From Malacoraja senta (lineage: Eukaryota), in the NCBI GenBank assembly GCA_038087875.1, contig JAXLNO010001232.1, forward strand, positions 1 to 64,000: a stretch of DNA of 64,000 nt, read 5' to 3'. Both the position numbers and the translations under genes were made by a program. Of the stretch, positions 15,992-36,328 are shown one piece after another (position 1 is the first letter of the stretch; each line of letters opens with the position of its first letter). The notes under the pieces are model-generated. The model ran no database searches, had not been told where the DNA came from, and saw nothing but the letters and a program-made list of their open reading frames with translations.

Positions 15992-16342
15992 ATCCCAAAT
16001 TGAAGCTGCGATCTCCCCAAATTACAATTCTCCAGCCGTCTGACCGTGAAATTAAAAACAGGGGCAAAGCCACTGTGGTTTGTCTCATCACTGATTTTTA
16101 CCCGGACAACATAAAAATTAAATGGATTCTCGATGACGTTGTACAACCCAAAAATAGTCCTAACATCCATACAGATCCAAGCTCCCAAAGCGAAGACGGA
16201 GAGAAGACCTTCAGTATAAGTAGTCGCTTTCGATTGGACGCCCGAGATTACGCAAAGGCCAAGAAAGTCGTCTGTGAAGTAGACCACTACAGGAATGGAT
16301 CTACGCCTCAAACTGAACAGGGAACCCACAACATCAAACACG
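15992..16342 (+). CDS. TRBC: TCR beta constant region exon 1 (Ig C1 domain)
   Basis: (D)PKLKLRSPQITILQPSDREIKNRGKATVVCLITDFYPDNIKIKW...FSISSRFRLDARDYAKAKKVVCEVDHY...NIKH. Conserved Cys, Trp and FYPD; AG acceptor at 15990-15991, phase-1 GT donor at 16343. Resembles shark TCR-beta C from recall. Confidence 0.95.
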
Positions 16343-18019
16343 GTGAAATTTCTAACCCCAATGTCTTGTAAAGCTTTAGCATGACATCCCAATGTCTATA
16401 CTCAATGCTCTCACTGATGAAAGCCAAAAGCCTACTTAACCACCCTATCTACTTGTGATGCCACTTTTGATGAACATCTTCCCTATAACCGGGTGAACAA
16501 AACGTTACGGAATATTCCATATGTGTCCTCACCAATATCGTGTGCAACTGTAATATGACCTCCCAAATCCTATTTTTAATTCTAATTTGTTCTTGGTCGT
16601 CATCAGTCAGGGTATTGGGCTTCTTTTAACAGAAGCTGAATTTCAAATAATGGAAGCTGACTTATCTGATTTGCAAAACTATCGTCTGTGGAATAATTGT
16701 TTTCTGTTTTAACTTACAAAAGAGCCACAACAATCCCTCTCTCTCCAGTGGAATAAAAACCATGGTTTTATTATCTGGAAGGTATCTCAAAACCCATAAG
16801 GTCATAAGTGAAAGGAGCAGAACGAATCCATTCGGCCCATCAAGTCTACTCCGCGATTCAATCACGGCTGATCTAAATCTCCCTCCTAAAACCATTCTCC
16901 TAACTTCTCCCCATACCCCTTGACACCCGTACCAATGGGAAATCTATCTCTGCCTTAAAAATATCCATTGAAAGTCTTAACAGCCATTTCATAATTCCAC
17001 ATATTCACCACCCTCTGAATAAATACATTCCTCCTCTCCTCCTTCTTAAATGAACGTCCATTAATTATGAGGCTGTAACCTTTTGTCCTAGACTCTACCT
17101 CTAGTGGAAACATCCTCTCCGCATCCACTCGTTGCAAGCCTTTCGCTATTCTGTATGTTTTAATGAGCCCCCCCCCCCCCCCCCATCTTTCTTCTAAACT
17201 CCAGCGCCATCAAACGCTCAACCTATGTATGATTCCTGGGATCATTCTTGTAAATCTCCTCTTGACCCTCGCCGGACCGTATGTATTTTCACCGCTCTTT
17301 ATATAGATTTTTGATAGAATATAACTTTATTTATCCCAGGAGAGATGTGAAGGATTTCAAGAAATCGACTCCAAGGTCCCTAGGTCAAAGAGTACATAAG
17401 CCACTCCTTGGGATGCCTGTAACACACTGCCAGGACAGGTGATGGAGACAGATATGAGGTAGCGTTTATGGGCTTTTAGATAGGCACACGGAAGTGCAGG
17501 GAATGGAGGAATATGGTTCACGTACAGGCAGATAAGATTAACAAGGAAATGCAAAAGCCGGTAAACACACGAAAGTACACAAACGTGGTTTACGAGAATG
17601 ATCCCGGGGATGATTGTTAACGTTCGATGAGCGTTTAACGGCGTCAGAGCCTGTTCTCGCTGGAGTTTAGAAAGATGAAGGGGGAACTAGATGAGGCCCG
17701 GGTAGAGTAGATGTGGAGAGAATGTTTCCATTCGTGGGAGAGTCTAGGACCAGAGGCCATAGCCTCAGAATAAAAGGACGTAGCTTGAGAAAGGAGATGA
17801 AGAGGAATGTCTTTAATCAGAGGGTGGTGAATCTCTGGAATTAATTACCAGCGAAGGCTGTGGGGGCCATCAATTGATATTTTTAAGGCCATCGACCATA
17901 ATCACCCGTACTTTATTTAGTTTTTATTTAGTTTAGTTTAGTGATACAACTTGGAAACAGGCCCTCCTGCTCAATGAGTCCAGGCCAACCAACAATCCCT
18001 ATATTGCATACTGGGGATA

Positions 18020-18215
18020 CTGGGAATTTTACCCAAGTCAATTAGTCTACAAACCCGCACTTCGTTGGACTGTGGGAGGAAGCCGGAGCACCCGGAGGAA
18101 ACCCACGGAGTCATAGGGTGAACGTGCAAACTCCGTACAGACAGCACCCATACTCAGGATCAACCCCGATTCTCCGGCGCTGTAAGGCAGCAACACCACC
18201 GCTGCACCACTGTTT
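18020..18215 (-). mobile_element. V-SINE (HE1-type) copy
   Basis: Reverse complement of the tRNA head and V-core (GTGGGAGGAAGCCGGAGCACCCGGAGGAAACCCACG on +). Confidence 0.75.
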
Positions 18216-18382
18216 TGCCCTCACCTGAGGATATTGTGAAGTGTATATGGAGTCAATGGTGGGAAGTCTGGTCTGTGTGAAATACTAGGCTTCATACACA
18301 ACTCTGCAATTTTTCGTAGCTTCGTCTCATAAATGGGTATATATGATAACACTGAACGCATTTTTCATATTTCTTCTTACAG

Positions 18383-18403
18383 AGACTTGTGGCTTGAGTA
18401 AAG
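18383..18403 (+). CDS. TRBC: TRBC exon 2 (connecting peptide, ETCGLSK, interchain Cys)
   Basis: 21-nt micro-exon, TTCTTCTTACAG|AGACTTGTGGCTTGAGTAAAG|GTGAGT, phase 1-1, in frame with exons 1 and 3. Confidence 0.9.
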
Positions 18404-19988
18404 GTGAGTGGCTCTACTTAAATAATATACCGTCATTATTTTAAGACTGTTTGCCCTTTCTGTGTCAGTTAAAACTTAATAGTCTCACTGAGCCATATAC
18501 ACGTGCAAAAAGACACTTCAGCTAAACTTGCCCACGCCAACCAACATGCCACATCTACACTATACCATCTGCCCGTTCTTGCCCACATCCCTCTAAAGCT
18601 TTCCTCTCCAGTTAACTGTCCAAACGTTTCATAAACGGTGTGATAGTGCCTGCCAGAACTATCCCCCCGCCCCCCCGGCCGCATGTTTCATCCCTCGGGT
18701 TCCTATTAAATCTTTCTCCCGCTCATCCCCTTCACCTTACACATATGGCCTCTGGTTCTCGATGCTCCATACTCTGGGCAAGAGACTGTGGATCTATTTG
18801 ATCTATTCATCGCATGATTTTGAACAGCTCTATAGGATAACCCCTACACTACAAGGATTAAAGTCCTAGCCTGACTCAACCTTTCCTGTAGCTCAGACCC
18901 TCGAGACTTGGCAACATTTATGTAAATATTCTTGGCATCCTTTCCGGCTTAACAACATCTTCCCATAAATAGGGTGACCAAAACTGAACACAATACCCAA
19001 TATGTGGCCTTACCGATGTCTAGCACAGCTACTATATCAATTATGTCCTCTGGGTCCTGATTCCCTATCGTGGGGGTAAAAGACTGTACATTTACCCGAT
19101 CTATTCCCCTCATGCTTTTATACAATATCAGATCACATTATCCTCCTGCGCTCCTAAGAATACATGTTTAGCCTGCTCAAACTCTCCCTATACCTCAGTC
19201 CTGGCAACATTCTCGGAAATATTCTCTGCACAATTTCTCGCACATCAACATATTTCCTATAACATGGTGAAAACTATAGTCCAAATGTGGCCTCACCATT
19301 GTCTTCCTGTAACATGCGTTCCAAATTTCTATACTCAATACTCTGACTAATGAAGGTAATGTGCAATGTCAGCCTCAGAAGACGGCTACGGGAATGTATC
19401 TGCCGACTCGAGCCGGGCCGGAGATACAGAGCCCCGGCCGCAGGGGGGTAATCTGACCATCACGCCGCCGCGGAAGTCCCGATGAGGTCGAGATCAGCAG
19501 CCACACTCGGCCTCAGCGTCACATTTTCCATGCGCATTTCAAGGAGGGATTTCAAGTATGCTCTCGTAACATGTTTGAGCTAAAGGAGGTGCCAGACCAC
19601 CAGTTGATGGAAAATCAGTGGTGGTAATGTATATTTGTGCTCCCGCTTTCAGGGAATTATGGACTTGGACCGCAAGATCCCTCTGTACATCGATGCCGTT
19701 GAGGGTCTTGCCACTAACTATAGAATTTCACCTTGCATACGACCTCCCAAAGTGCAACATCTCGCACGTGCTCAGATTAAAGTCCAACCGCCATTTATCT
19801 GCCCATTTATGTTGCTGATCTTTCTCCCACTGAATACTTTGACAGCTTTCCTCACAGTCCGCAACCCCAGCGTTTGTTAATTCACAATTTTCTGTTATGT
19901 TAAAGTGCCTATATGTTAATTTATTTGTTAAATAAACTCATTCTTAACTCTAGATGTTCTTTACCACATCTTTATATTCATTTAACAG

Positions 19989-20095
19989 AAGCTAAAATTC
20001 AGACAATGGAAACTGCGAAACTGACTTACCTGATCCTGATTTGCAAGAGTATTCTCTATGGAATAATTGTTTCTGTATTAGCTTGCAAAGCCAAG
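19989..20095 (+). CDS. TRBC: TRBC exon 3 (transmembrane), EAKIQTMETAKLTYLILICKSILYGIIVSVLACKAK
   Basis: TTTAACAG acceptor, AAG|GTAAGT phase-0 donor, 107 nt. The TM carries the conserved Tyr...Lys...Tyr pattern with a single Lys, as in beta chains. Confidence 0.93.
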
Positions 20096-20617
20096 GTAAG
20101 TCTTTCTGGCGAACAGAAATCCAGATATATATCCAAGATATATCCCGTTGAGTATAGAAGTTGTGAGAGCATGCTGCAGTTATATGAGATGTCGGGGAGG
20201 CCACAGTTAGAGTATTGTGTTCCACTTTGGTCACTATTATAGGAAAGATGTTGTCAAACTTGAAAACCTCAGAGAGGATTCACCACGATGTTGCTAGGAC
20301 TCGAGGGACTGAGCTATAGGGAGAGATTGAGCATGCTATGGCTTTATACATTGGAGCGCAGGAGGGCGAGAGGTGATCTTATAGAGGTGTACAAAATCAT
20401 GAGAGGAATAGATCGGGTAGTCTTTTGCCCAGAGTATGGGAAATGAGAACCAGAGGACAGAGGTTAAGGTGAAAGGGGAAAGATTTAATGAGAACCTGAG
20501 GGGTTAATTTCTCATACAAAGGATGGTGGGTGTATAGAATGAGCTGCCACCGGAGATGTTTGAGGCAGGTGCTATCGCACCGTTTCAGAAACATTTAGAC
20601 AGGTGCTTGGATTGGGT

Positions 20618-23600
20618 AGACAATAGACAATAGACAATAGACAATAGACAATAGACAATAGGTGCAGGAGTAGGCCATTTGGCCCTTCGAGCCAGCACTG
20701 CCATTCAATGTGATCATGGCTGATCATCCACAATCAGTAACCCGTTCCTGCTTTCTCCCCATATCCCCCGACTCCGCTATTTTTAAGAGCTCTATCTAGT
20801 TCCCTCTTGAAAACATCCAGAGAACTTACCTCCTCCGCCTTCTGAAGCAGAGAATTCCACAGACTCACCACTCTCTGTGAGAAAAATTGTTTCATCGTCT
20901 CCGTTCTAAATGGTTTACTCCTTATTCTTAAACTGTGGCCCCTGGTTCTGGACTCCCCCAACATCGGGAACATGTTTCCTGCTTTTAGCGTGTCCAAGCC
21001 CTTAAAAATCTGATATGTTTCAATGAGATGCCCTCTCATCCTTCTAAACTCCAGAGAGTACAAGCCCAGCTACTCCATTCTCTCAGCATATGACAGTCTC
21101 GACATCCCGGGAAGTAACCTTGTAAACCTACGCTACACTCCCTCAATAGCAAGAATGTTCTTCCTCAAATTAGGGGACCAAAACTGCACACAATACTCCA
21201 GGTGTTGTCTCACTAGGGCTCTGTACAACTGCAGAAGGACCTCGTTGCTCCTATATTCGATTCCTCTTGTTATAAAGGCCAAAATGCCATTCGCTTTTTT
21301 CACTGCCTGCTGTACCTGCATGGTTACTTTCATAGACTGATGTACAATGACCCCCAGATCCCGTTGTACTTCCCCTTTTCCCAACTTGACGCCATTTAGA
21401 TAGTAATCTGCCTTCCTGTTTTTGCTACCAAAGTGGATAACCTCACATTTATCCGCAATAAACGTCATCTGCCATGAATCTGCCCATGCATTCTCATGGC
21501 ATCCTCCTCACAGTTCACACTGCCACCCAGCTTTGTGTCATCTGCAAATTTGCTAATGTTACTTTGAATCCCTTCATCCAAATCATTGATGTATATTGTA
21601 AATAGCTGCGGTCCCAGAACCGAGCCTTGCGGTACCACACTAGTCACTGCCTGCCATACTGAAAGGGTCCCTTTAATCCCTACTCTTTGTTTCCTGTCTG
21701 CCAACCACTTCCCTATCCATGTCAGCACTCTACCCCAATACCATGTGCCCTAATTGTGCCCAATAATCTCCTATGTGGGACCTTATCAAATGCTTTCTGA
21801 AAGTCCAGGTGCACTACATCCACTGGCTCTCCCGTGTCCATTTTCCTAGTTACATCTTCAAAATATTCCAGAAGATTAGTCAAGCATGATTTCCCCTTCG
21901 TAAATCCATGCTGACTCGGACCGATACTCTTACTGCTATCCAAATGTGCGGCTATCTCATATTTTATAATTGACTCCAGCATCTTCCCCACCACCGATGT
22001 CAGGCTAACTGGTCTATAATTTCCCGTTTTCTCTCTCCCGCCTTTCTTAAACAGTGGGAAAACATTAGCTACCCTCCAATCCACAGGAACTGATCCTGAG
22101 TCTATAGAACATTGGAAAATTATCACCAATGCATCCACGATTTCAAGAGCCACTTCCTTATCTACCCTGAGATGCAGACCATCAGGCCCTGGGTATTTAT
22201 CAGCCTTCAGTCCCATCAGTCTATCCAACACCATTTACTGCCTAATGTGGATTTTCATCAGTTCCTCTGTCAGCCCAGATCCTCTGGCCACTACTATATC
22301 AGGAAGATTGTTTGTCTCCTCCTTAGTGAAGACAGATCCAAAGTACCTGTTCAACTCATCTGCTATTTCCTTGTTCCCCATAATAAATTCAAATGTTTCG
22401 GTCTTCAAGAGTCCAATTTTGGTCTTAACGATTTTTTTCTTCTTCACATACCTAAAGAAGCTTTTACTTTCGTGCTTTATATTCTTGGCTAACTTACCTT
22501 CGTACCTCATCTTTTCTCCCCGTATTGTATTTTTGGTTATCTTCGGTTGTTCTTTAAACATTACCCAATCCTCTTGCTTCCCGCTTATCTTTGCTACGTT
22601 GTAATTCTTCGTTTTAATTTTTTATGCTGTCCCTGACGTCCCTTGTCAGCCATGGTCGTCCCTTTCTCCCCTTGGAATCTTTCTTCCTCCTAGAAATGAA
22701 CTGATCCTGCACCTTCTGTATTATTCCTAGAAACACCTGCCATTTTTGTTCCACTATCATCCCTGCTAGTGTATATTTCCAGTCAACTTTGGCCAGCTCC
22801 TCCCTCATGGCCCCATAGGCCCCTTTATTCAACTGCAACACTAACACCTCCGATCTACTCTTCTCCCTCTCCAATTGTAGATTAAACCTGACCATGTTAT
22901 GGCCACTGCCTCCAAATGGCTCATTTATAAAGGACCTCGAGGTCCTTTATCAAATCCGGTTCATTACATAACACTAAATCCAGAATTGCCTTCTCCCTGG
23001 TTGGCTCCAATACAAGCTGTTCAAAGAGTCCATCACGAGGGCACTCAACAAAGTCCCTTTCTTGGGGTCCAGTACCAACCTGATTTTCCCAGTCTACCTG
23101 CATGTTGAAATCTCCCATAACAACCACAATATTACATTTGCTACAAGCCAATTTTAACTCCTGTTTCATCTTACGCCCTATGTCCAGGCTACTGTTTGGG
23201 GCCTGTAGATTAGTCCCATTAGGGTATTTATACCCTTACAATTCCTTAGTTCTATCCATACTGACTCCACATCTCCTGTTTCAATGTCACCCCTTGCAAG
23301 GGACTGAATTTGATTCCTCACCAACAGAGCAATCCCACCCCCTCTGCCCACCTGTCTGTCTTTTCGATAGGATGTATACCCTTGAATATTCTGTTCCCAG
23401 TCCTGGCCCTCTTGCAGCCAGGTCTCAGTAATTCCCACAACATCATACTTGCCAGTTTCTAACTGAGCTTCAAGCTCGTTCACTTTATTCGCGCATTCAT
23501 ATACAGTACTTTGACCTCCGTATTCACTTCCCCATCGCAATTGGCCCAGACCTTACACTGTTGTCCATTCTCAAGCTTTCCTTCCCATTAATTCGAGCAT

Positions 23601-24540
23601 CTTTTGTAATTTTTACTGTAGCCATTTCCCCTTCAACTCAATCTTTATACTCCCAATTTGTCAATCCCTCCGCCCACTATTTAGTTTAAACCCACACGTG
23701 TAGCCCTCGCAAATCTGCCTACCAGAACGTCGGCCCCCCTCCAGTTAAGGTGTAACCCGTCCCTTTTGTACAGGTCACCCCTACCCCAGAAGAGCTCCCA
23801 GTGGTCTATAATTCTAAATCCTTGCTCCCAGCACCAGCCCCTCAGCCACACATTCAGATTCCCAATCTCCCTGTTTCTGTCCTCACTAGCACGTGGTACT
23901 GGAAGCAATCCAGAGATAACCACCCTAGAAGTCCGGCATTTCATTTTTCTTCCCAACTCTCTGAAGTCAGGTTGGAGAACCTCCTTCCTCTTCTTCCCGA
24001 TGTCGTTTGTGCCTTCGTGCACAACTACTCCCGGCTGCTCACCTTCTCTCTCTCGAGGACGTTCAGAATTCGGCTCGTGACATCCTGAACCCTGGCACCA
24101 GGGAGGCAACAGACCATCCTCGCATCTCGCCTGCCGCCACAGAATCATCTATCCGCTCCTCGGACAATGGAGTCACCCAGCACAAGGGTACTGCCCGACT
24201 TCGCTCTCGCCGGTCGAGTCCCATCTCCAGAATTGGAGCCACCGACGTGTCCGCCGCTCGGACTGGGAACATTGTCTCCCCGGACAGTTCCCAAGACGGC
24301 GTACCTGTTTTCATTAGGCACAGCCACCTGAGTCTTCTGCACTCAACGATTTGCACCCTTTCTCCCCGTCACACACCTTGGTTCTTACCGAAACCTCGGC
24401 GTGACTACCTCACTGTAGGTCCTGTCCAGGAAACTCTCGTTTTCCCGGATGGCCCTGAGGTCATACAGCTGCTTCTCCAATGCCCCCACACTGTCTTTTA
24501 GGAGCTGAAGCAAGACGCACTTGCCACAGTTGTAGCAGCC
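20618..24540 (-). mobile_element. CR1 LINE, near full length: ORF1 (Cys motif + SGNH esterase) and fragmented ORF2, (CTATTGT)n tail
   Basis: ORF1 CYNCGKC (~24500-24535) and esterase motifs VLGDS (~24160) and VVHEGTND...VVISGLLPVP (23681-24148); ORF2 endonuclease and RT pieces 20734-23540; tail repeats 20618-20660. Confidence 0.93.
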
Positions 24541-25389
24541 AGAGGCTCCATTTGTGTCCCTGATTGAGAAGGATATGGTACAAACGCCGGCAGTTGGGAC
24601 TAGTTTAGATTGGGCATGTTGGTCCGCATGGGCCTGTTTCCATGCTGTGTGACTCTATGACTCTATATCCACATGTCAGGGGAATTGGAGCTATTTTTCA
24701 TTGAGCTGGGAATCATTGAGTCGTAGTCATACAACACGGAAACATGCCCTTTGTCCCAACATGCCTATGCCGCCCAAGATGCACCATCTACACTAGTCCC
24801 ACCTGCCCGCGTTTGGCAAATATCCCTCTCAACCTATCTTATCGATATACCTGTCCAAAAAAACATTGTGATAACAACTGCTTTAACTACCTCCTCCAGC
24901 AGCTCTGTCCATATACGCACCTCCATATGTGTATAAAAGTTGCCCCCCCATGTGCATTAATTCTTTCCCCCACCCGCCTCACTTTAAGGTATTTCCTTTG
25001 GTTCTCGATGCCCCAGCCCTGGATAACAGACTCTGCGCGTTAAACCTATCTATTCTCCTCATGATTCTGTACAACTCCATACGATCACACCTCATCCTCC
25101 TCCGTCCAAGGAAGAAAGTCCTAGCCCGCGCAACCTCTCCCTGTAGCTCAGGCATTTGAGTCTTGGCAATGTCCTTGTAAATCTTCCCTGTACTTGTTTC
25201 AATATTAAAGGGACACAAATTGCTGCAGTAACTGAGCGGGTCAGGCAGCATCTCTAGAGAACATGGATATGGGTGAGATCGGTCTAGACCCAACGCATCA
25301 CGTGTCGATAATCTACAGAAACAGAAACATGGACAAAAATGTTTAGTGGGATATTCCGTTTTGTTATCGCATGTACCGAGGATAAAGTG

Positions 25390-25860
25390 AATAACGTTTA
25401 GTGCAAAGAATAAACATTGAAGTCCAATAAAGTCTGATTAAAGATAGTTCAACAATTTTAAATGAGGTAGACGGGAGATCAGGACGGCTCTCTAGTTGGT
25501 GAGAGTGCGGTTTAGTTGCCTGATAATAGCTGGGATGAAACTGTCCCGGAATCGTGAGGTATGCGTTTTCAAACTTCTGTATTTCGTCCCCGATTAGAGA
25601 GCGGAGGAGTCACCGGGGCGAGAATGCTCCTTGATTATGCTGGTGGCTTTGCCGGGACAGCGTGGTGTGGATGGATTCAGTGTTTCGATTGCACGATTGT
25701 CTGTTCTGCGTCCACACCTCTTTGTGATTGCTTGCGGTCTTGAATGGAGATGTCCCCAAAACATACTGCGATGCATCCCGACAAAATGCTTTCTACGGTA
25801 CATTTGTAGAACTTGTGAGGATTGTTGGAAAAATGGCAATATCAAATATTCAGAGGAAGT
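25390..25860 (-). mobile_element. Rex1/Babar-like LINE fragment
   Basis: Same RT C-terminal family as the 4310-4700 and 36329-36770 fragments. Confidence 0.5.
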
Positions 25861-26064
25861 AGAGGCATTGGTGTGCTTACCTGAGAATGGGCCAAACACG
25901 GGCAGGTGGGACGGATCCAGGTGGGACGGGTGCAGATGGGACACCTTGATTGGCATGGGAAAGTAGAGTCAAATAGCCAGTTTCGGGGCTGTGTTGACGG
26001 AGACCCTCTATGCCGCTCCCCTCTCTGCTTCTCTCTCACTCTATCTCCTTCCACACCACCGCCC

Positions 26065-26535
26065 TCCTCCTCCCTTGCTTTCTCTTATGAGGAAAGGTTC
26101 AAAAGACTAGGCTTGTATTCACTGGAGTTTAGAAGGATGAAGGGGATTCTTATAGAAACATGAAAAATTATAAAAGGACTGAACAAGCTAGATGCAGGAA
26201 AAATTTTCCCAATGTTGGGCGAGTCCAGAACCAGGGGCCACAGTCTTAGAATAAAGGGGAGATAATTTAAGACTGAGGTGAGAAAAAACTGTTTCACCCA
26301 GAGAGTAGTGAATTTATGGAATTCCCTGCCACAGAGGGCAGTGGAGGCCAAGTCACTGGATGGATTTAAGAGAGAGTTAGATAGAGCTCTAGGGGCTAGT
26401 GGAGGGAAGGGATATGGGGAGAAGGCAGGCACGGGTTATTGATAGGGGACGATCAGCCATGATCACAATGAATGGCGGTGCTGGCTCGAAGGGCCGAATG
26501 GCCTCCTCCTGCAACTATTTTCTATGTCTAAGTCT
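26065..26535 (+). mobile_element. CR1 3' end
   Basis: YEERFKRLGLYSLEFRRMKG...; typical 3' UTR ending CTCCTGCAACTATTTTCTATG. Confidence 0.85.
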
Positions 26536-26759
26536 ATGCCTATGTCTCTCTTCCGACAGTTTACGTTTTTAAACTTTATTCGTAATAATTCTATAAATAA
26601 AGCATGAAATGTTAATATAATGTGATTCCGGCCACGACGGGAAAAATGTCGACCGGAATATGTTTTAAAAACAATTATCGTTACCGCGTTGTTTTTTTCG
26701 CGAAGATGTAAAGACAACCACATATACACACACGTACAAGATAAGAGTTTTAATAAGTA

Positions 26760-26884
26760 CTAGACCAAGTGCATACCCGTTGGGTCCGTTCCCGCAACGC
26801 ACGGTTGCGAGGGGAGGGGGCGGCCTGAGGCGTCGCACACACACTAACCAACCTCTCACACATACACACACACTAACCACCCCT

Positions 26885-26915
<31 letters not shown>

Positions 26916-27594
26916 TTATATTAAGAAGGGAGGGAGGAGAGTGGTAGGGCCGCCCAGCAGCCGTCGGCCTCAGAGTGAGCCTCAGCTGCATGGCCTCGTA
27001 TCCTCGGCGCTTCAGACCTCGAGTACGCGGAGGGGGGAGGGTGGAGTGGGCGTGCGGGCGTGATCCCGAGTGAGCCTGCGGGTCGCCAGCGAGAACGGCG
27101 AAAAGCAGCGGGGGGACCAGCCGATCTTTGGCTTCCGCCAGCGTGACAGAGCCGGGCCGGGGGGGGGCTAGTGGAGGGGAGCCGGACGGCAGCAGCCATT
27201 ATGGTCGCGCGGTGCACGCGATGAGAAGGTGGCCAGCGGGAGGCGAAAAAATGAGTGAGTGGGGGGTGGAGTGAAGGGTTTTATTTAAAATGTGTATAGA
27301 AAAATGACTAAATTTAATGAGTGGATTTGCGAATGTAAAAGTAAAATCGCTAGGTCGCGTGGGGCACGCGATAAGAAGGTGGCCAGCGGGAGGCGAAAAA
27401 ATGACTGATTGGGTGGGAGGATTTTATTTTAAATGTGTACAGAAAAATAACTAAATTTAATGAGGAGTGGATCAGCGAATGTGAAAGAAAAATCGTTGGC
27501 GAACTGGTAAAAATCTCGGCGTATTTGCGTCTGGTTTTCGCGGAGTAATGAATCAAAGGCAAAATTCAAATGCAAAATGACGCGAAATGACACA

Positions 27595-27659
<65 letters not shown>

Positions 27660-27682
27660 ACATAGTTTCAAAAGTATATAGA
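26760..27682 (-). mobile_element. Non-autonomous Helitron (~920 bp)
   Basis: On the minus strand: A|TCTATA 5' end (27682), 3' hairpin ACCC-AAC-GGGT about 10 nt before CTAG|T (26763-26760), no target-site duplication. Contains an internal ~130-bp duplication and (CA)n. Confidence 0.7.
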
Positions 27683-27842
27683 TATGATGATTATGTGGTT
27701 TCATGCTTTCGCGACTTTTTTACATTATGATTCCATTAATTATATTAATGATTCCATAATGTCATAGCATCAAGATTACATGATTCCTATTTAGTGATTT
27801 TGATCTATGATTCCAGGATGTCATGATTTTGTAAGTTGGTAA

Positions 27843-29185
27843 GTTACTGGACAGAATTCTGAGGGATAGGATATACAAGCATTTGGATGGGCAAGGGCTG
27901 ATTAGGGGCAGTCAGCATGGTTTTGTACGAGGGAGGGCGTGTCTCACAAATCTGATTGATTATTTTGAATATGTGAGCAAAACGGTTGGTGAGGGCAGAG
28001 ATGTAGTTGTTTTGTACATGGACTTTATTAACGCGTTCGACAAGGTGCCGCATGGAAGACTATTCTGAAAGGTTCGATCTCATGCGATCCAAGGTGAGAT
28101 AGCTTAATCGATAGCAAATTGGCTCCATTTAAGGAAGCAGAGGGTCTTTGTTGAAGGTTGCTTCTCAGAATGGAAGCCTGTGACTTGTGGTGTGCCACAG
28201 GGTCCGGTGCTGGCCCCCTTACTATTTGTCATCTACATCGATGATTTGGATGAGAACAACAGGGCAAGATTAGCACGTTTGCTGATGATACTAAAGTTAT
28301 TGGTTTTGCAGTTAGTGAATCAATTTGTGAACGATTGAAGCATGATCTGGACCGATTGCCTATGTGGGCGGAGGAATGGTTGATGTAATATAATACAGTG
28401 AAATGTGAAGTGTTGTATTTTGGGGCGTCGAACAAGGGCAGGACCTACACAGTAAATAGTAGGTCTCTGAGTAGTGTTGTAGAGCAGAGGGATCTGGGAA
28501 TAAAAGCGCATGGTTCGTTGAAGGGCTACTCGTAGGTAAACAAGGTGGTCAAAAAGGCCCTTTGACCTTCATCTGCCAGAGTATTGAGTATAGAAGTTCG
28601 GAGGTCATGTTGCAGTTGTATAAAACTTTGGTGAGACCGCATTTAGAATATTGTGTTCAGGTCTGGGCACCATGTTATAGGAAATATAACATCAAGCTTG
28701 AAAGGTTTTAGAAAATATTTACGAGGACGTTGCCAGGACTAGAGGGTGTGAACTGTAGAGATAGGTTATGTAGGCTGGCTCTCTATTCCATGGAGCGCAG
28801 GAGGATGAGGCCAGATCTTATAAAGGTATACAAAATCATGAGAGGAATCGATCGGGTAGATGTACAGAGTCTTTTACACAGAGTAGGGGATTCGAAGACC
28901 AGAGGACATAGGTTCAAGGTCAAGGGGAAAGGATTTAACAGGAATTCGAGTGGTAATTTTTTCGCACAGAGGATGGTGGGTGTATGGAACAAGCCGCCAG
29001 AGGAGGTTGTTGAGGCTGGGACTATCCCATCGTTTACGAAACAGTTGAACAGGTACATGGATAGGACAGGTATGGAGGGTTATGGACCAAGGGCAGGCAA
29101 GTGGGACTAGGGTAGCTTGGACATTGTTGGCCGGTGTGTGCGAGTTTGGCCGAAGGGCCTGTTTCCGCACTGTATCACTCTATGA
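27843..29185 (+). mobile_element. CR1 5'-truncated copy (RT to 3' end)
   Basis: HGFVRGRACLTNL, AFDKVPHGRL, MPGLEGVNCRDRLCRLALYSMERRR...WD*; inserted into an AT-rich CATGAT repeat. Confidence 0.85.
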
Positions 29186-29189
29186 GTAT

Positions 29190-29590
29190 GAGTCTACAAT
29201 ATCTCAAATTTCCTAATTTATCATTTCATGGCTCCATGATTTTAATGATTTTGTGGCTTTATCATTTCATGTTTCCATGATATATCTGATTTCTGAATTA
29301 TTCAACTTCACGATACCTTTGCTTTCAAGATTGTATAACTTTATTGTTCCATGATATCCCCTATTTCAAGATTGAATAATTTCATGGTACCATGTCTCCA
29401 ATTTCAACATTATATGACCATGATTTCGCTGATTTTGTGACGTTATGACTGTGATTCCATATTATTTATGAATTCAGGATTTAATAATTGAGTAGTTCTG
29501 AGATATACCTGATTTCAGTTTTGTATAACTTTATGATTCCATGATATCTCTGATTTCAGGCCTGCGTAACCACGATCCCGTGATTTCAGG
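29190..29590. repeat. AT-rich degenerate satellite (TTTCATG/ATGATT units), also at 27684-27840
   Basis: Recurrent CATGATTT and TATGATTCCATGAT units on both sides of the CR1 insertion. Confidence 0.7.
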
Positions 29591-29860
29591 ATCATACGAA
29601 CCTACCTTTCCTCAGATTTGAAATCATTTTGGATTATTAATTCGCTTTGCTGCGTTAGTTAGCTGCGTTTGCTCATGACCTGTTACCTGTTTCACTCGGA
29701 AATCAATGTTCTTGTGATCCGGAGAGTTGGTTTTCCGACGGACATCAAACTATAATCTTTGCAGAGGCCTCTGAATTCACCAGAGATCTTGCAATCTGCA
29801 TCTTTATGTACGTGGTGGTATCTTAAGCAATAAAGAGAGCGTTACTGCAAATAAATCTCT
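29560..29860 (+). CDS. Candidate TRBC terminal exon (cytoplasmic tail + 3' UTR), acceptor uncertain
   Basis: Non-repetitive block with two AATAAA signals (29829, 29850). Possible phase-0 starts: 29560 (ACVTTIP*), 29590 (DHTNLPFLRFEIILDY*) or 29616 (I*, best pyrimidine tract CCTACCTTTCCTCAG). Confidence 0.35.
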
Positions 29861-29959
29861 CGTTTCTCATTTACTTATGTCATATTTGCATAAAACGTAA
29901 ATAGTCAGAATTCAAGGGGCCTGAGCTACAGAAATTTCATAAATTATAGGAGCAGTATT

Positions 29960-32900
29960 AGTCAAGTCTTGAATCATGGCTGATCTATATTTCCCTCTCA
30001 ACTGTATTGTCACGCCTTCACCCCATAACCTCTGAAGCCTGTACTAATCAATATTTTGACAAACGCATCCTTTATCCATTGACCTGGCCTCCACGGCTGT
30101 CTGTGGCAATGAGTACAGGCCACAGATTCACCACCCTCTGGCTAAAGAAATCCCTCCACATCTACATTCTAAAGGAACATCCTTTTATTCTGAGTCTGTG
30201 GCTTCTGGCCCTAGACTCTCCCACTAACCATAAAAACATATCCACATCAACTCTATCCAGTACTTATACTATTTGGTACGGTTCTATGAGGTCCACCTAC
30301 CCCCCTCATCCTTCTAAACTGCAATGTGTACAGGCCCAGTATCATCAAATGCTAATGAATTAATCAAATCATCCTTGGATCATTCTTGCAAACCTCTGCT
30401 GGACACTCTCCAATCTGGGTGAGGGAGAGGTTTGAGCAGGCTAGGCATTTATACCTTGGAACACGGTAGATGTTGTATATATGGATTCCAGCAAGGCATT
30501 TGACAAGGTTGCGCATGGTAGGCTGCCCTGGAAGGTTAGATGGCATGGGATCCAGTGAGAGAGAGCTGAATGGATAGAAAATTGTGTTCATAGAAGGAAG
30601 CAGAAGGTGTTGCTGAAATGTAGTTTTTCGACTGCATGCCTGTGACTATTGGTGTGCCTCAGGGTTCGTTGCTGGGCCAATTGCTATTTGTCATCATATC
30701 AATGATGTGGATGAGAACATACAAGGCATGATTAAGGTCATAATGTAAGGAATAGGAGCAGAATTTGGCAATTCGGCCCATCAAGCCTACTCAATCATTG
30801 CTGATATATCTCTCCTCACCCTTTCTCCTGCCTTCTCCCCATAACCTCTGACATCTGTACTATTCAAGAATCTATCTATCTGTGCCTTAAAAGTATCCAC
30901 CTAGTTGGCCTCTACAGCCTTCTGTGGCAGAGAATTCCACAGATTCACAACCCTCTGACTAAATACATTTCTCACCATCTCCTTCCTAAATAACGTCCTT
31001 TAATTTTGAGGCTATAACTTTTAGTTCTACACTCTCCCGCCAATGAAAACAACCTCTCCACTTCCATTATATCTACTATTATTTATGTTTCAATGAGGTT
31101 GTTCTAAATTCCAGCGAGTACAGGCACAGTGCCGACAAACGCTCATCAGAGGTTAACCTACCTATTCCTGGGATCATTCTTGTAAACCTCCTCTGGGCCC
31201 TCTCCTGAACCAGTAAACCTCATCTGGGCCCTCTCCTGAACCAGCACTGGATAGACTCGGCTTGTACTCGCTAGAATTTAGAAGATTGAGGGGGGATCTT
31301 ATAGAAACTTACACAATTCTTAAGGGTTTGGACAAGCTAGATGCAGGAAGATTGTTCCCGATGTTGGGAAAGTCCAGGACACGGAGTCACAGTTTAAGGA
31401 TAAAGGGGAAATCCTTTAGGACCGAGATGAGAAAAACATTTTTCACGCAGAGAGTGGTGAATCTCTGGAACTCTCTGCCACAGAAGGTGGTTGAGGCCAG
31501 TTCATTGGCTATATTTAAGAGGGAGTTCGATGTGGCCCTTGTGGCTAAAGGGATCAGGGGGCATGGAGAGAAGGCAGGTTACATGATACTGAGTTGGATG
31601 ATCATCCATGATCATATTGAATGGTGGTGCAGGCTCGAAGGGCCGAATGGCCTACTCCTGCACCTATTTTCTATGTTTCTATGTTTCTATCCTACTTCAG
31701 ATCTGGTGCCCAGAATTACTCACAGTATTCCAAATGCGGCCTTACCAGCGCTTAATATAGTCTTGACATTTCATTCCTGTTTTTGTATTCTAGCCCTCTT
31801 GAAATATATGCTAGTATTTTGTTTGCTTGCTTTACTCCCGATTCTACTTGCCGATTAACTTTTTGGAAATCCTGCTCCTTCACTGCCAAGTCCATTTGCT
31901 CCTCCGATTTCTGGATTCTCTCCCCATTTAAAAAATAGTCTACACCTTTATTCCTACTTCAAAAATGCATTACTCCACATTATGCAGCACTATGTTCCAT
32001 CTGCCACTTCTCTGCCACTCTTCCAACCTATCAATGTCCTTCTGCAGAGTCCCTGTTTTCTCTATACTACCTGCCCCTCCACCTATTTTCGTATCAACCG
32101 CAATTTTTTCCACAAAGACTTCAACCCACTCGTCCAGATCATTAGTATACAATTCGAAGAGTAGCGCCCCCAGCACCGACCAACTCCACTAGTCACTGGC
32201 AGTCAACCAGAAAAATAACCCATTATTGCCAGCTCTTTGTCTTCTGCCATCCAGCCAAGCAGCTATCCATGTATACGCACTTTGATACCGTGGGCTCTCA
32301 TCTTCCTAAGCAGCATAACGTGTGGCACCTTATCAAAGGCTTTCTGTTGATATAAGTAAATGACATCTCCTTTGTCTGTCCTGCTATCTACTTCCTCAAA
32401 GAATTCCAGCAAATCTGTCAAGGAAGACCTCCCCTTTACAAAGCCATGCTGACTTCGGCATATTTTATCGTGAACATATCAGTACTCTGAAACATCCTTT
32501 TTCATGATCTTTAAAATCTTACCCAACAACTGAAGTCAGATCAACCGGCCTCTAGTTCCCACTGTTATGCCTTGCTACCTTTTTTTGTGCAGCGGGATAC
32601 TATTGGCAATTTTCTAATCATCTGGAACAACTTCTGACTAGTGATTCCTAAAATAGCATTATCAATGCCTCCACAAACACTAAAGTCACTTATTTCTGAA
32701 CCATATAGTGCAGTCCATACGGCCCAGGTGACATCCAACTTCATCCCTTTTAGTTTCCCAAGCATCTTCTCCCTGGTAATAACCACTACACTAACTTCAA
32801 CCCCTAACTCTTGAATCTCAGGCACGTTGCTGGCGTCTTCCTCTGTGCAGACTGATGAAAAAAGTTATCCAACTCCTCTGCCATTTCCTTATTCCCCATT

Positions 32901-34897
32901 ATCACTTCACCCGCATCATTCTCCAGCAGTTTAATGTACACTCTTCTCTCTTTCTTACACTTCATATAAATGAAGAGAGTCTTGCTATTCTTTTTTTAAT
33001 ATTATTGCTTTCGTATTTCATCTTTTCTCCCCGTATTGTATTTTCTGTTACAATCTGTTGCACTTGAAAAGCTCATCAATCCTCTGGTTTCCCGCTAACC
33101 TTTGCACTGTTATCTTTTAGGTATATACTGTCCTTGACTTCCCTTGTCAGCCACGGACGCGGCTGTCTCCCCCAAGAATCTTTCTTCCGCTTTGGAATGA
33201 AATGATCCTGCATATTCCAGATTTGTCCTTAAAATTCTTGCCATTTGGTGGTCTACCGTCATCCTGCTAGGGTCCCATTGTAGTCAACATTGGCCATCTT
33301 CTCCCTCATGTCTCTGTTATCCCCTGCAATGCCGACACATCCAATTTCACCTTCTCCCTCTCAAATTGCATATTAAAACTTATCATGTTGTGGTCGCTAC
33401 CTCCTAATGGTTCATTTATCTTGAGTTCCCTGATCAAATCCGGTTCATTACATAACACTAAATGCAAAATTACCCTTTCCTTGGTAGGCTCCATCACAAA
33501 CTCCTTTAAGAATCCATCTCGTTGGGTCTCTACATATTCCATTTCTTGTAAACCAATACCAACCTAATTTTCCCAATTCCCTGCATATTGAAATCTCCCA
33601 TGATCAACGTAGCATTGCCCTATTTGCATGCCAATTTTATTTCTTGATGTACCCTATTCAATGGCTACTGTTTGGGAGCTGTAAATAACTCCCATTAAGG
33701 CCTTTTTAGCCTTATAATTTTTCAGCTCTATCCACAATAATTCTACACCTTCTGACCCTATTTCACCCTCACCCCCACTCCCTATGCCTACTTCCTGTCA
33801 TTCCGATATGACGTATAACCCTGAATATTAAGCTCCCAGCTCCGATCGTCTTGCAGCCACGTCTTCTGGGATTTTCTTAAGATGTAACTAGGAAAATGGA
33901 CAAGGGAGAGCCAGTGGATGTAGTGTACCTGGACTTTCATAATGCATTTGCTAAGGTCCCCCATAGGAGATTAGTGGGCAACATTAGGGCACATGGTATT
34001 GGGGGTAGAGTGCTGACATGGATAGAGAAGTGGTTGGCAGACAGGAAACGAAGAGTAGGGATTAACTGGTCCCTTTCAGAATGGCAGGCGGTGACTAGTG
34101 GGCTACCGCGAGGCTCGGTGCTGGGATAGCAGCTATTTACAATATACATCAATGATTTGGATGAAGACAACGGGATCTGGGTGGTCATTGTACATCAGTC
34201 TATGAAAGTACCCATGCAGGTACAGCAGGCAGTGAAAAAAGCGAATGGCATGTTGGCCTTTATAACAAGAGGAATCGAATATAGGAGTAAAGAGGTCCTT
34301 CTGCAGTTGTACAGAGCCCTCGTGAGACCAAACCTGGAGTATTGTGTGCAGTTTTAGTCCCCTAACTTGAGAAAGGACATTCTTGCTATTGAGGGAGTGT
34401 AGCGTAGGTTTACAAGGTTAATTCCCGGGATGGCGGGACTGTCATATGCTGAGAGAATGGAGAAGCTGGGCTTGTACACTCTGGAGTTTAGAAGAATGAG
34501 AGGGGATCTCATTGATACATATAAGATTGTTAAGGGCGTGGACACGCTAGAGGCCGGAAACATGTTCCCGATGTTGGGGGAGACCAGAACCAGGGGGCAC
34601 ATTTTAAGAATAAGGAGTAAGCCATTTAGAACGGAGACGAGGAACTTTTTCTCACAGATAGTGGTGAGTCTGTGGAATTCTCTGCCTCAGAGGGCGGTGG
34701 AGGCGGTTCTCTGGATGCTTTCAAGAGAGAACTGGATAGGGCTCATAAAAATAGCAGTCAGAGGATATGGGGAGAAGGCAGGAACGGGGTACTAATTGGG
34801 GATGGTCAGCCATGATCACATTGAATGGCGGTGCTGGCTCAAAGGGCCGAATGGTCTACTCCTGCACCTATTGTCTATTGTCTATTGTCTATTGTAT
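29960..34897. mobile_element. CR1 cluster: plus 3' end 31245-31690, degenerate minus EN-RT 31700-33870, plus RT-3' end 33870-34897, older fragments 29960-31240
   Basis: ORFs 31262-31858, 33896-34129, 34157-34357 and 34430-34795 carry CR1 RT motifs; (TGTTTCTA)n and (CTATTGT)n tails. Confidence 0.85.
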
Positions 34898-35006
34898 ATG
34901 TAATTCCCACAACATCATGCCTACCAATCTCTAAATGTGCTACAAGCTCGTCCACTTTGTTTCCTTTTGTACGCGCATTCAAATACAACACTTTAATTCA
35001 GTAGTG

Positions 35007-35549
35007 ACCTGTGACACCACTTTCGGGGAACTATGCACCTGCACTGTTAGATCCCACTGCTCCACAACACTCCTGTCTACATGAGACGCCACTGTCAGGG
35101 AACTATGTACCTGCATTCCTCGATCTCCACGCTCCACAACAATCCCTGTCTTCCTGTGACGCCAACTTCAGAAACAATATACCTGCACTCCTATATCTCT
35201 CAACTCTACAACACTCACCATCTACCTTTGATGGTACTTTCAGTGAACTACTGTATGTACCTGCAGTCCTAGATCCGTCTGCTCGACAACACTCCCTGAT
35301 TACGTGTGACTCCGCTTTCTGGGAACTATGTACCTGCACCTCTAGATACATCTGCTCTAGAACACTCCATCTCCACCTGTGACACTACTTTCAGGGAACT
35401 ATGCACCTGCACCCCAAGATCCCTCTGCACTGCAATACCCCCTGTCTACCTGTGACGTTAATTTCAGGGAACTATTTACATTCACTCCAAGATCTCACTG
35501 CTCTTCAACACTCCCTGCCTATATGCGATACTACTTTAAGGGAACTATG
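35007..35549. repeat. Minisatellite, about 8 units of ~71-76 bp, derived from an internal CR1 ORF2 segment
   Basis: Approximate consensus TGTGACNCCACTTTCAGGGAACTATGTACCTGCACTCCTAGATCCCTCTGCTCTACAACACTCCC; the reverse complement corresponds to the CR1 peptide GSVVEQRDLGVQVHSSLKVASQV. Confidence 0.85.
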
Positions 35550-35599
35550 GAGGGTGGGGGGGAGGAAGAGGTAAGTGGAAATAAATCACTGGTTTGTTT

Positions 35600-35910
35600 C
35601 TGACTTGCACAGTTTGGCTTCCGGTGGCTTCCGGAAATTCTGAGTCAAACGGAAAAAAAAGCCGACAGAGATCGAACAAATGCAGGCGAATCGAGAATAA
35701 CAAGTAGCAGGTGCCTGAGAGAAGGCGGCAGTTCATGCGGATGTGGTCTAAACAACAATTGTCTGTTCCACTACACCGTTGCCTGTCTAAAGTAGGTCAC
35801 ACCATCTCCGCCCGGTTTGTGGTCTAACTAGTTCTCGACATTTGAGCGTTAGTGTGTCGTAGGGGGAAGGGACGTCGCTTGGTGCTCTGCTCTGAAAGCA
35901 CCTGTTTATT
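35600..35910. promoter_or_regulatory. Candidate TCR-beta 3' enhancer (E-beta-like)
   Basis: Ets cores CTTCCGG (35618, 35628) and CCGGAAAT (35631), AP-1 TGAGTCA (35641), E-boxes CAGGTG (35708) and CACCTG (35899), Ets-Runx composite GGATGTGGT (35739-35747), second Runx TGTGGT (35818), Myb-like CCGTTG (35776) and GACGTC (35871). Unique sequence about 6 kb 3' of the putative last C exon. Confidence 0.55.
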
Positions 35911-36328
35911 TGCCTTTCTCTCCCTATCTATCCCTCTCACTCTCGCTCTANNNNNNNNNNNNNNNNNNNNNNNNNNNNNNNNNNNNNNNNNNNNNNNNNN
36001 NNNNNNNNNNNNNNNNNNNNNNNNNNNNNNNNNNNNNNNNNNNNNNNNNNNNNNNNNNNNNNNNNNNNNNNNNNNNNNNNNNNNNNNNNNNNNNNNNNNN
36101 NNNNNNNNNNNNNNNNNNNNNNNNNNNNNNNNNNNNNNNNNNNNNNNNNNNNNNNNNNNNNNNNNNNNNNNNNNNNNNNNNNNNNNNNNNNNNNNNNNNN
36201 NNNNNNNNNNNNNNNNNNNNNNNNNNNNNNNNNNNNNNNNNNNNNNNNNNNNNNNNNNNNNNNNNNNNNNNNNNNNNNNNNNNNNNNNNNNNNNNNNNNN
36301 NNNNNNNNNNNNNNNNNNNNNNNNNNNN

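What the first reader, a model, noticed from the sequence alone, without database searches (positions are those of the whole stretch)
35600..35910. Candidate cartilaginous-fish TCR-beta enhancer with an E-beta-type Ets-Runx composite
Seen: a ~300-bp non-repeat island with three Ets cores (35618-35638), AP-1 (35641), two E-boxes (35708, 35899), GGATGTGGT (35739-35747) and a second Runx site (35818). Both Runx sites read TGTGGTCTAA. Established: mammalian E-beta lies a few kb 3' of the last C exon and depends on GGATGTGG Ets1-Runx1 composites. Inference: this is the corresponding enhancer, about 6 kb after the putative polyA, which would imply that E-beta logic is shared across jawed vertebrates.
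Basis: partly seen in the sequence, partly recalled or inferred. Interest (0 to 1): 0.78.

Follow-up and report, generated by a model that had tools for sequence, protein, structure and literature searches.

The report
Candidate skate TCR-beta 3′ enhancer
A 300-base, low-copy stretch about 15 kb downstream of a skate T-cell-receptor beta constant gene carries a dense set of T-cell transcription-factor sites, and a bamboo shark has a matching cluster in the same place, so it is a credible but untested candidate for the gene's enhancer.

Summary
The neighbouring gene is a TCR-beta constant gene: J at 1366-1414, C exon 1 at about 15992-16343, hinge at 18381-18402, TM exon at 19987-20096.

Read depth shows the island (35548-35907) is low-copy DNA between two high-copy repeats. 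It is not unique. Four skate-like organisms each hold an ortholog (about 92-95% identical) and a second copy (about 87%). That copy's homology starts at 35583 in every one and ends at 35846-35888 where the contig spans it.

Only one useful outgroup locus could be fetched, bamboo shark TRBC plus 10 kb. Generic alignment to it is no better than shuffles. The skate-defined motif scan nevertheless peaks there 9.4 kb 3' of TRBC on the same strand (0 of 1000 shuffles reach it). That region shares two collinear exact 11-mers with the island (17 of 3000 shuffles) and similar site spacing. The shared blocks read as an NFAT:AP-1-type composite and a ROR-element-like site followed by a RUNX site.

Homology to mammalian E-beta was not tested, and there are no expression or chromatin data.

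Verdict: plausible TRB 3' enhancer, confidence about 0.5.

The parts
35583..35888 (+). Core of the low-copy element. This is the block over which the second genomic copy (about 87% identity) aligns. The left edge is the same in all four organisms.
   Evidence: table 8 (records 8, 16, 23, 30) and table 2 (depth about 20-150).
35615..35634 (-). Perfect 10-bp tandem duplication of TGGCTTCCGG, giving two CCGGAAGCC high-affinity Ets sites one helical turn apart.
   Evidence: No indel is reported here in any ortholog or paralog contig (table 4).
35633..35647 (+). GGAAA-TTC-TGAGTCA, an NFAT:AP-1-type composite with the 3-bp spacer of the IL-2 ARRE2 element.
   Evidence: ARRE2 sequence and spacer are from PMC13103735. 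The pattern is expected 0.01 times per window. Its only occurrence in 141 kb of shark loci is L001 22290-22304. Position 35639, in the spacer, is A in most other contigs.
35708..35713 (+). E-box CAGGTG.
   Evidence: MAFFT places it opposite CAGCTG in the shark. It lies 75 nt from the composite, against 81 nt in the shark.
35739..35748 (+). GGATGTGGTC, an ETS/RUNX composite of the TCR-alpha/beta enhancer type.
   Evidence: The composite definition is from PMC2787013. The shark has CGGAAGT at the aligned place, 106 versus 107 nt from the NFAT:AP-1 block.
35789..35799 (+). AAAGTAGGTCA, a ROR-response-element-like site (AGGTCA preceded by an A/T-rich 5-mer).
   Evidence: Exact collinear 11-mer in L001 at 22469-22479. 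The RORE definition is from PMC11545807. It lies inside a 58-nt run with no listed differences among skate species.
35818..35827 (+). Second RUNX site, TGTGGTCTAA, 29 nt after the RORE-like site.
   Evidence: The shark has TGTGGTA 30 nt after its copy of the 11-mer. No listed difference in 35786-35843 in organisms B, C or D.
35899..35904 (+). E-box CACCTG, outside the paralog block and next to the repeat that starts at 35908. Its membership in the element is doubtful.
35007..35549 (.). Left boundary: a 73-bp tandem array belonging to a very high-copy repeat family. It is not part of the element.
   Evidence: Depth is 10^3-10^5.
15992..16343 (+). TRBC exon 1 (C1-set Ig domain).
18381..18402 (+). 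TRBC hinge exon (ETCGLSK), with AG and GT splice sites.
19987..20096 (+). TRBC transmembrane exon.
1366..1414 (+). TRBJ segment (SNSEAYFGIGTKLVVL) with a 12-spacer RSS upstream and a GTGAGT donor.

Best explanation
The 305-bp low-copy element at 35583-35888 is most likely a lymphoid (T-lineage) cis-regulatory module belonging to the TRB locus, the cartilaginous-fish counterpart in position and logic of the 3' TCR-beta enhancer.

Inferred mechanism: RUNX factors bind the two TGTGGTC sites, one of them next to an Ets protein on the GGATGTGGT composite. Further Ets or GABP-type factors bind the tandem CCGGAAG pair, and E-proteins bind the CAGGTG box. Two blocks that are also present in a shark would add activation- or stage-dependent input: an NFAT:AP-1-type composite, and a ROR-element-like site fixed about 30 nt before a RUNX site. 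The assembled complex would open chromatin over the upstream D-J-C region and drive germline transcription, rearrangement and TRB expression.

Shown here: the sites, the low copy number, the position 3' of TRBC, and a comparable and partly collinear cluster 3' of bamboo-shark TRBC.

Inferred only: factor binding, enhancer activity, the target gene, and homology with mammalian E-beta.
For: 1. The gene is TRBC and the island is 3' of it on the same strand.
2. The island is the top motif window of the 64 kb.
3. It is low-copy DNA between high-copy repeats.
4. As an independent test, the same motif set applied to bamboo-shark L001 peaks at 22331-22700, which is 9.4 kb 3' of TRBC. The score is 8-9 against 4 for the next window, and 0 of 1000 shuffles reach 8. 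There are four TGTGGT within 185 nt, which 5 of 1000 shuffles match.
5. The island's best blastn hit in L001 falls in that same region, and the shark region's best non-low-complexity hit in the skate window is the island.
6. Two collinear exact 11-mers on the same strand occur in only 17 of 3000 shuffles. Among 326 real control segments, the 37 with this property lie at TRBC exon 1 or, judged by eye against the ORF lists, within LINE/TE-derived sequence.
7. Spacings agree between skate and shark: 75 vs 81 nt to the E-box, 106 vs 107 nt to the Ets site, 29 vs 30 nt from the RORE-like site to RUNX.
8. Within skates, 13 variable sites lie in 35751-35881 but none in the 58 nt holding the RORE-like and RUNX sites (p about 0.011).
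9. Mouse E-beta needs its two Runx sites and its Ets sites (PMC5288706). The human site reads CAGGATGTGGT (PMC2787013).
Against: - Generic local-alignment and anchor-chain scores between the island and L001 are at shuffle level.
- The 11-mer in the NFAT:AP-1 block depends on a T at 35639 that most other skate contigs read as A, so that exact match may be partly coincidental.
- The ETS/RUNX composite is not conserved in the shark.
- Many ortholog-only and paralog-only differences in 35583-35750 were not displayed (95 rows hidden), so motif conservation there is unknown.
- Related skates differ by only about 5-8%, which gives little power.
- The second, divergent TRBC type (L002, L003) shows no such cluster within 10 kb.
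- Tandem CCGGAAG sites are typical of housekeeping promoters (PMC2787013).
- No GATA site lies in the low-copy part, and the CRE-like GACGTC is lost in the other species (35874 G>A).
- No RNA, ATAC or reporter data exist.
- The motif set and several of the tests were defined after looking at the data.
Confidence: 0.5

Rival explanations
1. It is a non-functional remnant. Unique or two-copy DNA left between transposon insertions happens to hold a cluster of short motifs, and the shark resemblance is coincidence.
For: Between 2% and 4.5% of shuffled 64-kb windows contain an equally good cluster. Generic alignment to the shark is not above shuffles. Two of the motif pairs are simple local duplications (a 10-bp tandem, and a repeated 10-mer). 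Orthologs are too close to be informative.
Against: The shark cluster was found with a motif set fixed beforehand, is far outside its null (0 of 1000 shuffles), and coincides with the best sequence hit, on the same strand and the same side of TRBC. The collinear 11-mer pair has p about 0.006. Substitutions are unevenly distributed and avoid the RORE-like and RUNX block.
Confidence: 0.22
2. It is a real regulatory element but not an E-beta equivalent. It could be an activation-responsive (NFAT:AP-1) enhancer, or a GABP/Ets-type promoter of an unannotated transcript or neighbouring gene that merely lies near TRBC.
For: Tandem CCGGAAG sites 10 bp apart are the promoter-type Ets motif that ETS1 and GABPA co-occupy (PMC2787013). 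The best-conserved block is an NFAT:AP-1-type composite, which is not a described E-beta component. CpG observed/expected is 0.94 against 0.58 for the window. A second copy exists elsewhere.
Against: No RNA run holds the island, and there is no Rfam match there. No other gene was recognised nearby, only LINE, Penelope, tRNA and U1-like sequence. The CpG value is only in the top 10% of windows. Its position and strand relative to TRBC are the same in skate and shark.
Confidence: 0.2
3. It is a fragment of a transposable element (LTR, SINE or LINE 5' region) whose own promoter supplies the Ets, AP-1 and RUNX sites.
For: The paralog has a sharp edge that is identical in four organisms (35583) and a discrete length of about 305 bp. 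The element sits among LINE fragments and next to a TE-derived tandem array.
Against: Only two copies at 80% identity or more appear in each of four genomes, against 10^3-10^5 word depth for the true repeats beside it. There is no other copy in the 64-kb, TE-rich window. The shark region lies outside the neighbouring 5'-truncated LINE and has no copy in 118 kb of other shark sequence. No terminal repeats were seen.
Confidence: 0.08

Closest known systems
Mammalian TCR-beta enhancer (E-beta; about 560-bp core 3' of C-beta-2, elements beta-E4 and beta-E6)
   Same: It lies 3' of a TRBC gene. It has two RUNX sites about 80 bp apart, one in a GGATGTGGT ETS/RUNX composite identical to the core of the human site CAGGATGTGGT. 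It also has E-boxes.
   Different: It is about 15.5 kb rather than a few kb from the last recognisable C exon. There is no GATA site in the low-copy part. It carries extra tandem CCGGAAG sites, an NFAT:AP-1-type composite and a RORE-like site. Sequence homology was not tested and function is unknown.
Bamboo shark (Chiloscyllium punctatum) region L001 22287-22660, 9.4 kb 3' of TRBC (unannotated)
   Same: Same side and strand relative to TRBC. It shares the GGAAATTCTGA(G/C)TCAAA and AAAGTAGGTCA blocks in the same order, with an E-box, an Ets site and a RUNX site at nearly the same offsets. It is the top motif cluster of its locus.
   Different: The shark has four RUNX sites, three or four E-boxes, two or three GATA sites and a decamer-like GGTGACATCA. 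It has no ETS/RUNX composite and no tandem CCGGAAG pair. Overall identity is at chance level.
NFAT:AP-1 composite elements of cytokine genes (IL-2 ARRE2)
   Same: GGAAA, a 3-bp spacer, and an AP-1-type heptamer in the same orientation and spacing as mouse ARRE2, GGAAA-ATT-TGTTTCA.
   Different: Here the AP-1 half is a consensus TGAGTCA and the element lies in an antigen-receptor locus. Binding was not tested.
Housekeeping-promoter Ets motif (CCGGAAGT, redundantly bound by ETS1 and GABPA)
   Same: Two CCGGAAG cores one helical turn apart.
   Different: There is no evidence of a transcription start or transcript here.

Membership tests
E-beta-type TCR-beta 3' enhancer | Lies inside the TRB locus, 3' of the (last) C-beta gene | tested here: met
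TRBC exons are at 15992-20096 on the plus strand and the island is at 35583-35888. Whether this is the last C gene of the locus is unknown.
E-beta-type TCR-beta 3' enhancer | Two RUNX sites with adjacent Ets sites (beta-E4 and beta-E6 type composites) | tested here: met
   There is one GGATGTGGT composite and one solo TGTGGTC 76 nt away. The definition comes from PMC2787013 and PMC5288706. Only one of the two sites is a composite.
E-beta-type TCR-beta 3' enhancer | Accessory GATA, E-box and CRE sites | tested here: inconclusive
   An E-box is present at 35708. No GATA site lies in the low-copy part. The CRE-like GACGTC at 35871 is not kept in the other skates. The shark region does have GATA and CRE-like sites.
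E-beta-type TCR-beta 3' enhancer | Sequence homology to mammalian E-beta | not tested
E-beta-type TCR-beta 3' enhancer | T-lineage-specific accessibility and enhancer activity; needed for D-J rearrangement | not testable with these tools
   No RNA run holds the island. No ATAC or ChIP data could be reached.
E-beta-type TCR-beta 3' enhancer | Counterpart at the syntenic position in other cartilaginous fish | tested here: inconclusive
   Orthologs at about 92-95% identity exist in three related organisms. The bamboo shark has a significant motif cluster and collinear blocks. Generic alignment is not significant, and only one usable outgroup locus was obtained.
Conserved non-coding element (conventional definition, about 70% identity over 100 bp or more) | Alignable block between distant lineages | tested here: not met
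   The best skate-shark blastn hit is 18 of 20 matches (E 0.026). Local scores are at shuffle level.
Interspersed repeat / transposable element | Many dispersed copies | tested here: not met
   Two copies per genome at 80% identity or more, against 10^3-10^5 word depth in the flanking repeats. No other copy in the window. Copies below 80% identity were not searched.

The most novel reading that the evidence does not exclude
A TRB 3' enhancer has been retained since skates and sharks split. Its conserved core is not the textbook ETS/RUNX composite. It is instead an NFAT:AP-1-type composite plus a ROR-element/RUNX pair at fixed spacing. The enhancer was duplicated in skates, perhaps together with a second TRBC: the unnamed protein P0013 is 85% identical to this C gene, close to the 87% between the two element copies. 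If it is also homologous to mammalian E-beta, the enhancer would date to the origin of the TRB locus in jawed vertebrates.
Probability: 0.3. Interest if true: 0.75.

Novelty: new member of a known kind. Interest (0 to 1): 0.58.

Why it matters
My paper searches found no description of a TCR-beta enhancer in any cartilaginous fish. How antigen-receptor loci were regulated in the earliest jawed vertebrates is known almost only from coding sequence. This gives a defined 305-bp candidate in a skate and a matching 400-bp candidate in a bamboo shark, each with named sites to mutate. That turns 'is E-beta logic ancestral?' into a question that thymus ATAC-seq and reporter assays can answer. It also points to inputs (NFAT:AP-1 and ROR) that are not part of the classical E-beta description. 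The regulatory network itself (RUNX, ETS, E-proteins) is already expected to be conserved, so a positive result would confirm and refine current views rather than overturn them.

Tried and rejected
- **An Ig light-chain cluster instead of TRB.** The best PDB matches of exon 1 are kappa constant domains. I rejected this reading because the nearest database proteins are shark TCR-beta chains, and because hinge and transmembrane exons follow.
- **Exon 4 and polyA.** Regex and degenerate-DNA searches for the TSYNKRFV-type tail found nothing in 20097-36000. AATAAA hexamers at 29829 and 29851 (seen) cannot be tied to TRBC.
- **Rfam.** There is nothing in or near the island, only two tRNAs elsewhere in the window.
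- **RNA runs.** None holds the island.
- **Other cartilaginous-fish loci.** Look-ups for Mustelus (two), Pristis, Hemiscyllium, Scyliorhinus canicula, S. torazame, Carcharodon and Heterodontus gave no DNA, because the record was missing, the file too large or the gene range too long. L002 and L003 turned out to be a divergent second TRBC type and hold no counterpart.
- **Generic similarity tests.** Smith-Waterman under three scoring schemes, and 8-mer chaining, were both at shuffle level.
- **CpG island.** Observed/expected is 0.94, but that is only the top 10% of a weakly CpG-depleted window.
- **V-beta promoter reading.** No V-set ORF is present in L001 or in the skate window.
- **Shark region as part of the adjacent LINE.** Rejected, because that LINE is 5'-truncated near 21850.
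- **Earlier scan notes.** Nothing bears on this element.

Full report
**Observation.**
- TGGCTTCCGG is repeated in perfect tandem at 35615-35634. This gives two CCGGAAG Ets sites on the minus strand plus a third GGAA.
- The other sites are TGAGTCA at 35641, CAGGTG at 35708, GGATGTGGT at 35739, TGTGGTCTAA at 35742 and again at 35818, and CACCTG at 35899.
- The island is bounded on the left by a 73-bp tandem array (35007-35549). On the right it is bounded by CT-rich sequence that runs into an N stretch (35951-36328), which I left alone.

**Gene context.** I first had to find the C gene, because my ORF screens missed it.
- Exon 1 lies at about 15992-16343 on the plus strand and is a C1-set domain.
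- Its best solved-structure matches are kappa light-chain constant domains. The large protein database, however, gives shark TCR-beta chains: 50% identity to Mustelus, with relatives named TCR-beta in Heterodontus and Ginglymostoma.
- An unnamed cDNA-like protein, P0013, is 85% identical in exon 1 and 97% over 38 residues of the transmembrane exon, or 92.5% over all 40 by tblastn.
- P0013 let me place the hinge exon (18381-18402) and the TM exon (19987-20096), both with proper splice sites. It also confirmed a TRBJ with a 12-spacer RSS at 1366-1414.
- The short last exon was not found.
- What is firm is that the island lies 15.5 kb 3' of the TM exon, on the same strand, with LINE fragments filling most of the gap.

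**Repeat status.** I laid contigs of four public runs on 34900-35950. X1 is the same organism; X2, X4 and X6 are three others.
- The tandem array has word depths of 10^3-10^5, and the sequence from 35908 onward about 10^3-10^4. The island sits at about 20-150.
- In each organism that island depth is the sum of exactly two contigs. One is an ortholog that runs on into the array. It is identical in X1 and roughly 92-95% identical in the others.
- The other is a second copy of about 87% identity. Its homology begins at 35583 in all four organisms. It ends at 35846-35888 in the three organisms where the contig spans it; in X6 the aligned piece stops at 35750.
It is an old two-copy element of about 305 bp.
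- No indel is reported at the 10-bp Ets duplication in any contig, so that duplication predates the copy event.
- The displayed differences avoid the Ets, AP-1, E-box and RUNX cores. However, 95 rows were not shown, and in 35583-35750 differences confined to one of two overlapping contigs are probably among them. I do not claim motif conservation there.
- Where organism D has a single contig (35751-35912), 13 variable sites are listed and none falls in 35786-35843. The longest invariant run is 58 nt (p about 0.011).
- 35874 G>A removes a CRE-like GACGTC in the other species.

**Chance.** The island is the best 310-nt window of the 64 kb (8 hits, next 5) and the only one with all five classes. 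Only 2% of shuffles reach 8. This test is circular for the skate, so I used the same fixed motif set elsewhere.

**Outgroup test.** Most cartilaginous-fish assemblies could not be fetched. Three loci could.
- L001 is the bamboo shark TRBC, with exon 1 at 10001, the TM exon at 12265 and the gene end at 12925, plus 10 kb.
- L002 is a second, divergent bamboo-shark TRBC.
- L003 is whale shark, of the L002 type.

Results against L001:
- The island's best blastn hit is 35630-35649 against 22287-22306 (18 of 20 matches, E 0.026). A second, collinear exact 11-mer (AAAGTAGGTCA) follows at 35789 against 22469.
- The shark region searched back against the skate window returns the island as its best non-low-complexity hit.
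- Generic statistics do not support homology. Smith-Waterman scores under three schemes, and an 8-mer chain score, are at shuffle level.
- The narrower event 'two collinear exact matches of at least 11 nt' occurs in 17 of 3000 shuffles. Among 326 real skate control segments, the 37 showing it lie at TRBC exon 1 or, judged by eye against the ORF lists, within LINE/TE-derived sequence.
- Independently, the fixed motif scan peaks in L001 at 22331-22700, with 8-9 hits against 4 for the next window. No shuffle of 1000 reaches 8. There are four TGTGGT within 185 nt, matched by 5 of 1000 shuffles.
- L002 and L003 reach only 5-6 and show no RUNX cluster.
- The shark region is outside the neighbouring 5'-truncated LINE, holds no V gene, and has no copy in the other shark loci.
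- MAFFT, unprompted, puts the E-boxes and the Ets sites opposite each other. Offsets from the first shared block are 75 vs 81 nt to the E-box and 106 vs 107 nt to the Ets site. From the second shared block to the next TGTGGT they are 29 vs 30 nt.

One caveat applies. The T at 35639 inside the first 11-mer is A in most other skate contigs, so that exact match may owe something to luck. The position is in the spacer of the composite described next.

**What the shared blocks are.**
- GGAAA-TTC-TGAGTCA has the NFAT core, the 3-bp spacer and the AP-1 position of the mouse IL-2 ARRE2 element, GGAAA-ATT-TGTTTCA (PMC13103735).
- The pattern GGAAA-N3-TGASTCA is expected 0.01 times per window. It occurs at the island and once more in a TE-like part of TRBC intron 2. 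In 141 kb of shark loci it occurs only at L001 22290.
- AAAGTAGGTCA fits the ROR response element, an AGGTCA core preceded by an A/T-rich 5-mer (PMC11545807).
Mouse E-beta does need its two Runx sites and its Ets sites (PMC5288706). But the shark has a plain CGGAAGT at the aligned place. The composite is therefore not the conserved part.

**Reading.** The most likely explanation is a T-lineage regulatory module of the TRB locus, an E-beta counterpart in position and logic. I put this at about 0.5. The rivals are:
- a functionless remnant with a chance motif cluster (0.22);
- a real element with another role, either an activation-responsive enhancer or an Ets-type promoter (0.2);
- a transposon fragment (0.08).

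Nothing here tests factor binding, activity, the target gene, or homology with mammalian E-beta. The claim 'shared across jawed vertebrates' remains an inference.

**Novelty and score.** My paper searches found no description of a TCR-beta enhancer in cartilaginous fish. This is a predicted new member of a known kind, with modest cross-species support and clear experiments to settle it. Interest is 0.58.

Noticed in passing
window 16558-16701 (+): Degenerate copies of the TRBC transmembrane-exon sequence (KLTYLICKTIVCGIIV and TSQILFLILIC) lie in intron 1, about 3.3 kb upstream of the real TM exon. They look like a decayed partial duplication of the exon.
   Followed up: no
window 20097-36000: The last TRBC exon (the TSYNKRFV-type cytoplasmic tail of the related protein P0013) could not be found. 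A LINE fragment starts within about 100 nt of the TM exon donor. This C gene may use a diverged tail exon or may be defective.
   Followed up: partly
window 35007-35549: The 73-bp tandem array belongs to a very abundant repeat family (word depth up to about 10^5) shared by at least four skate-like organisms. Loose ends show the unit embedded in a longer common element.
   Followed up: partly
window 18872-18886 (-): A second exact match to the NFAT:AP-1-type pattern GGAAA-N3-TGAGTCA lies inside TRBC intron 2, in sequence that looks like the antisense strand of a LINE tail. The pattern is expected 0.01 times per window.
   Followed up: no
window 648-820, 2272-2475, 14391-14608, 15191-15647, 35951-36328: The N runs have irregular lengths, and several adjoin CT- or GA-rich low-complexity sequence. 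One of them ends only about 350 nt before TRBC exon 1.
   Followed up: no
L001 versus L002 and L003: The bamboo shark has two TRBC genes only about 46% identical in exon 1, on different contigs. The whale-shark locus fetched is of the second type. Only the first type shows the 3' RUNX, E-box and ETS cluster within 10 kb.
   Followed up: partly
L001 22358-22368: GGTGACATCA in the shark element matches 9 of 10 positions of the V-beta promoter decamer / CRE motif AGTGAYRTCA. The motif is recalled from memory and was not checked in a paper.
   Followed up: no
window 43654-43725 (+) and 48101-48174 (-): Two tRNA genes score well above the Rfam threshold. They sit in the region where other notes report U1-like and Penelope sequences.
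   Followed up: no
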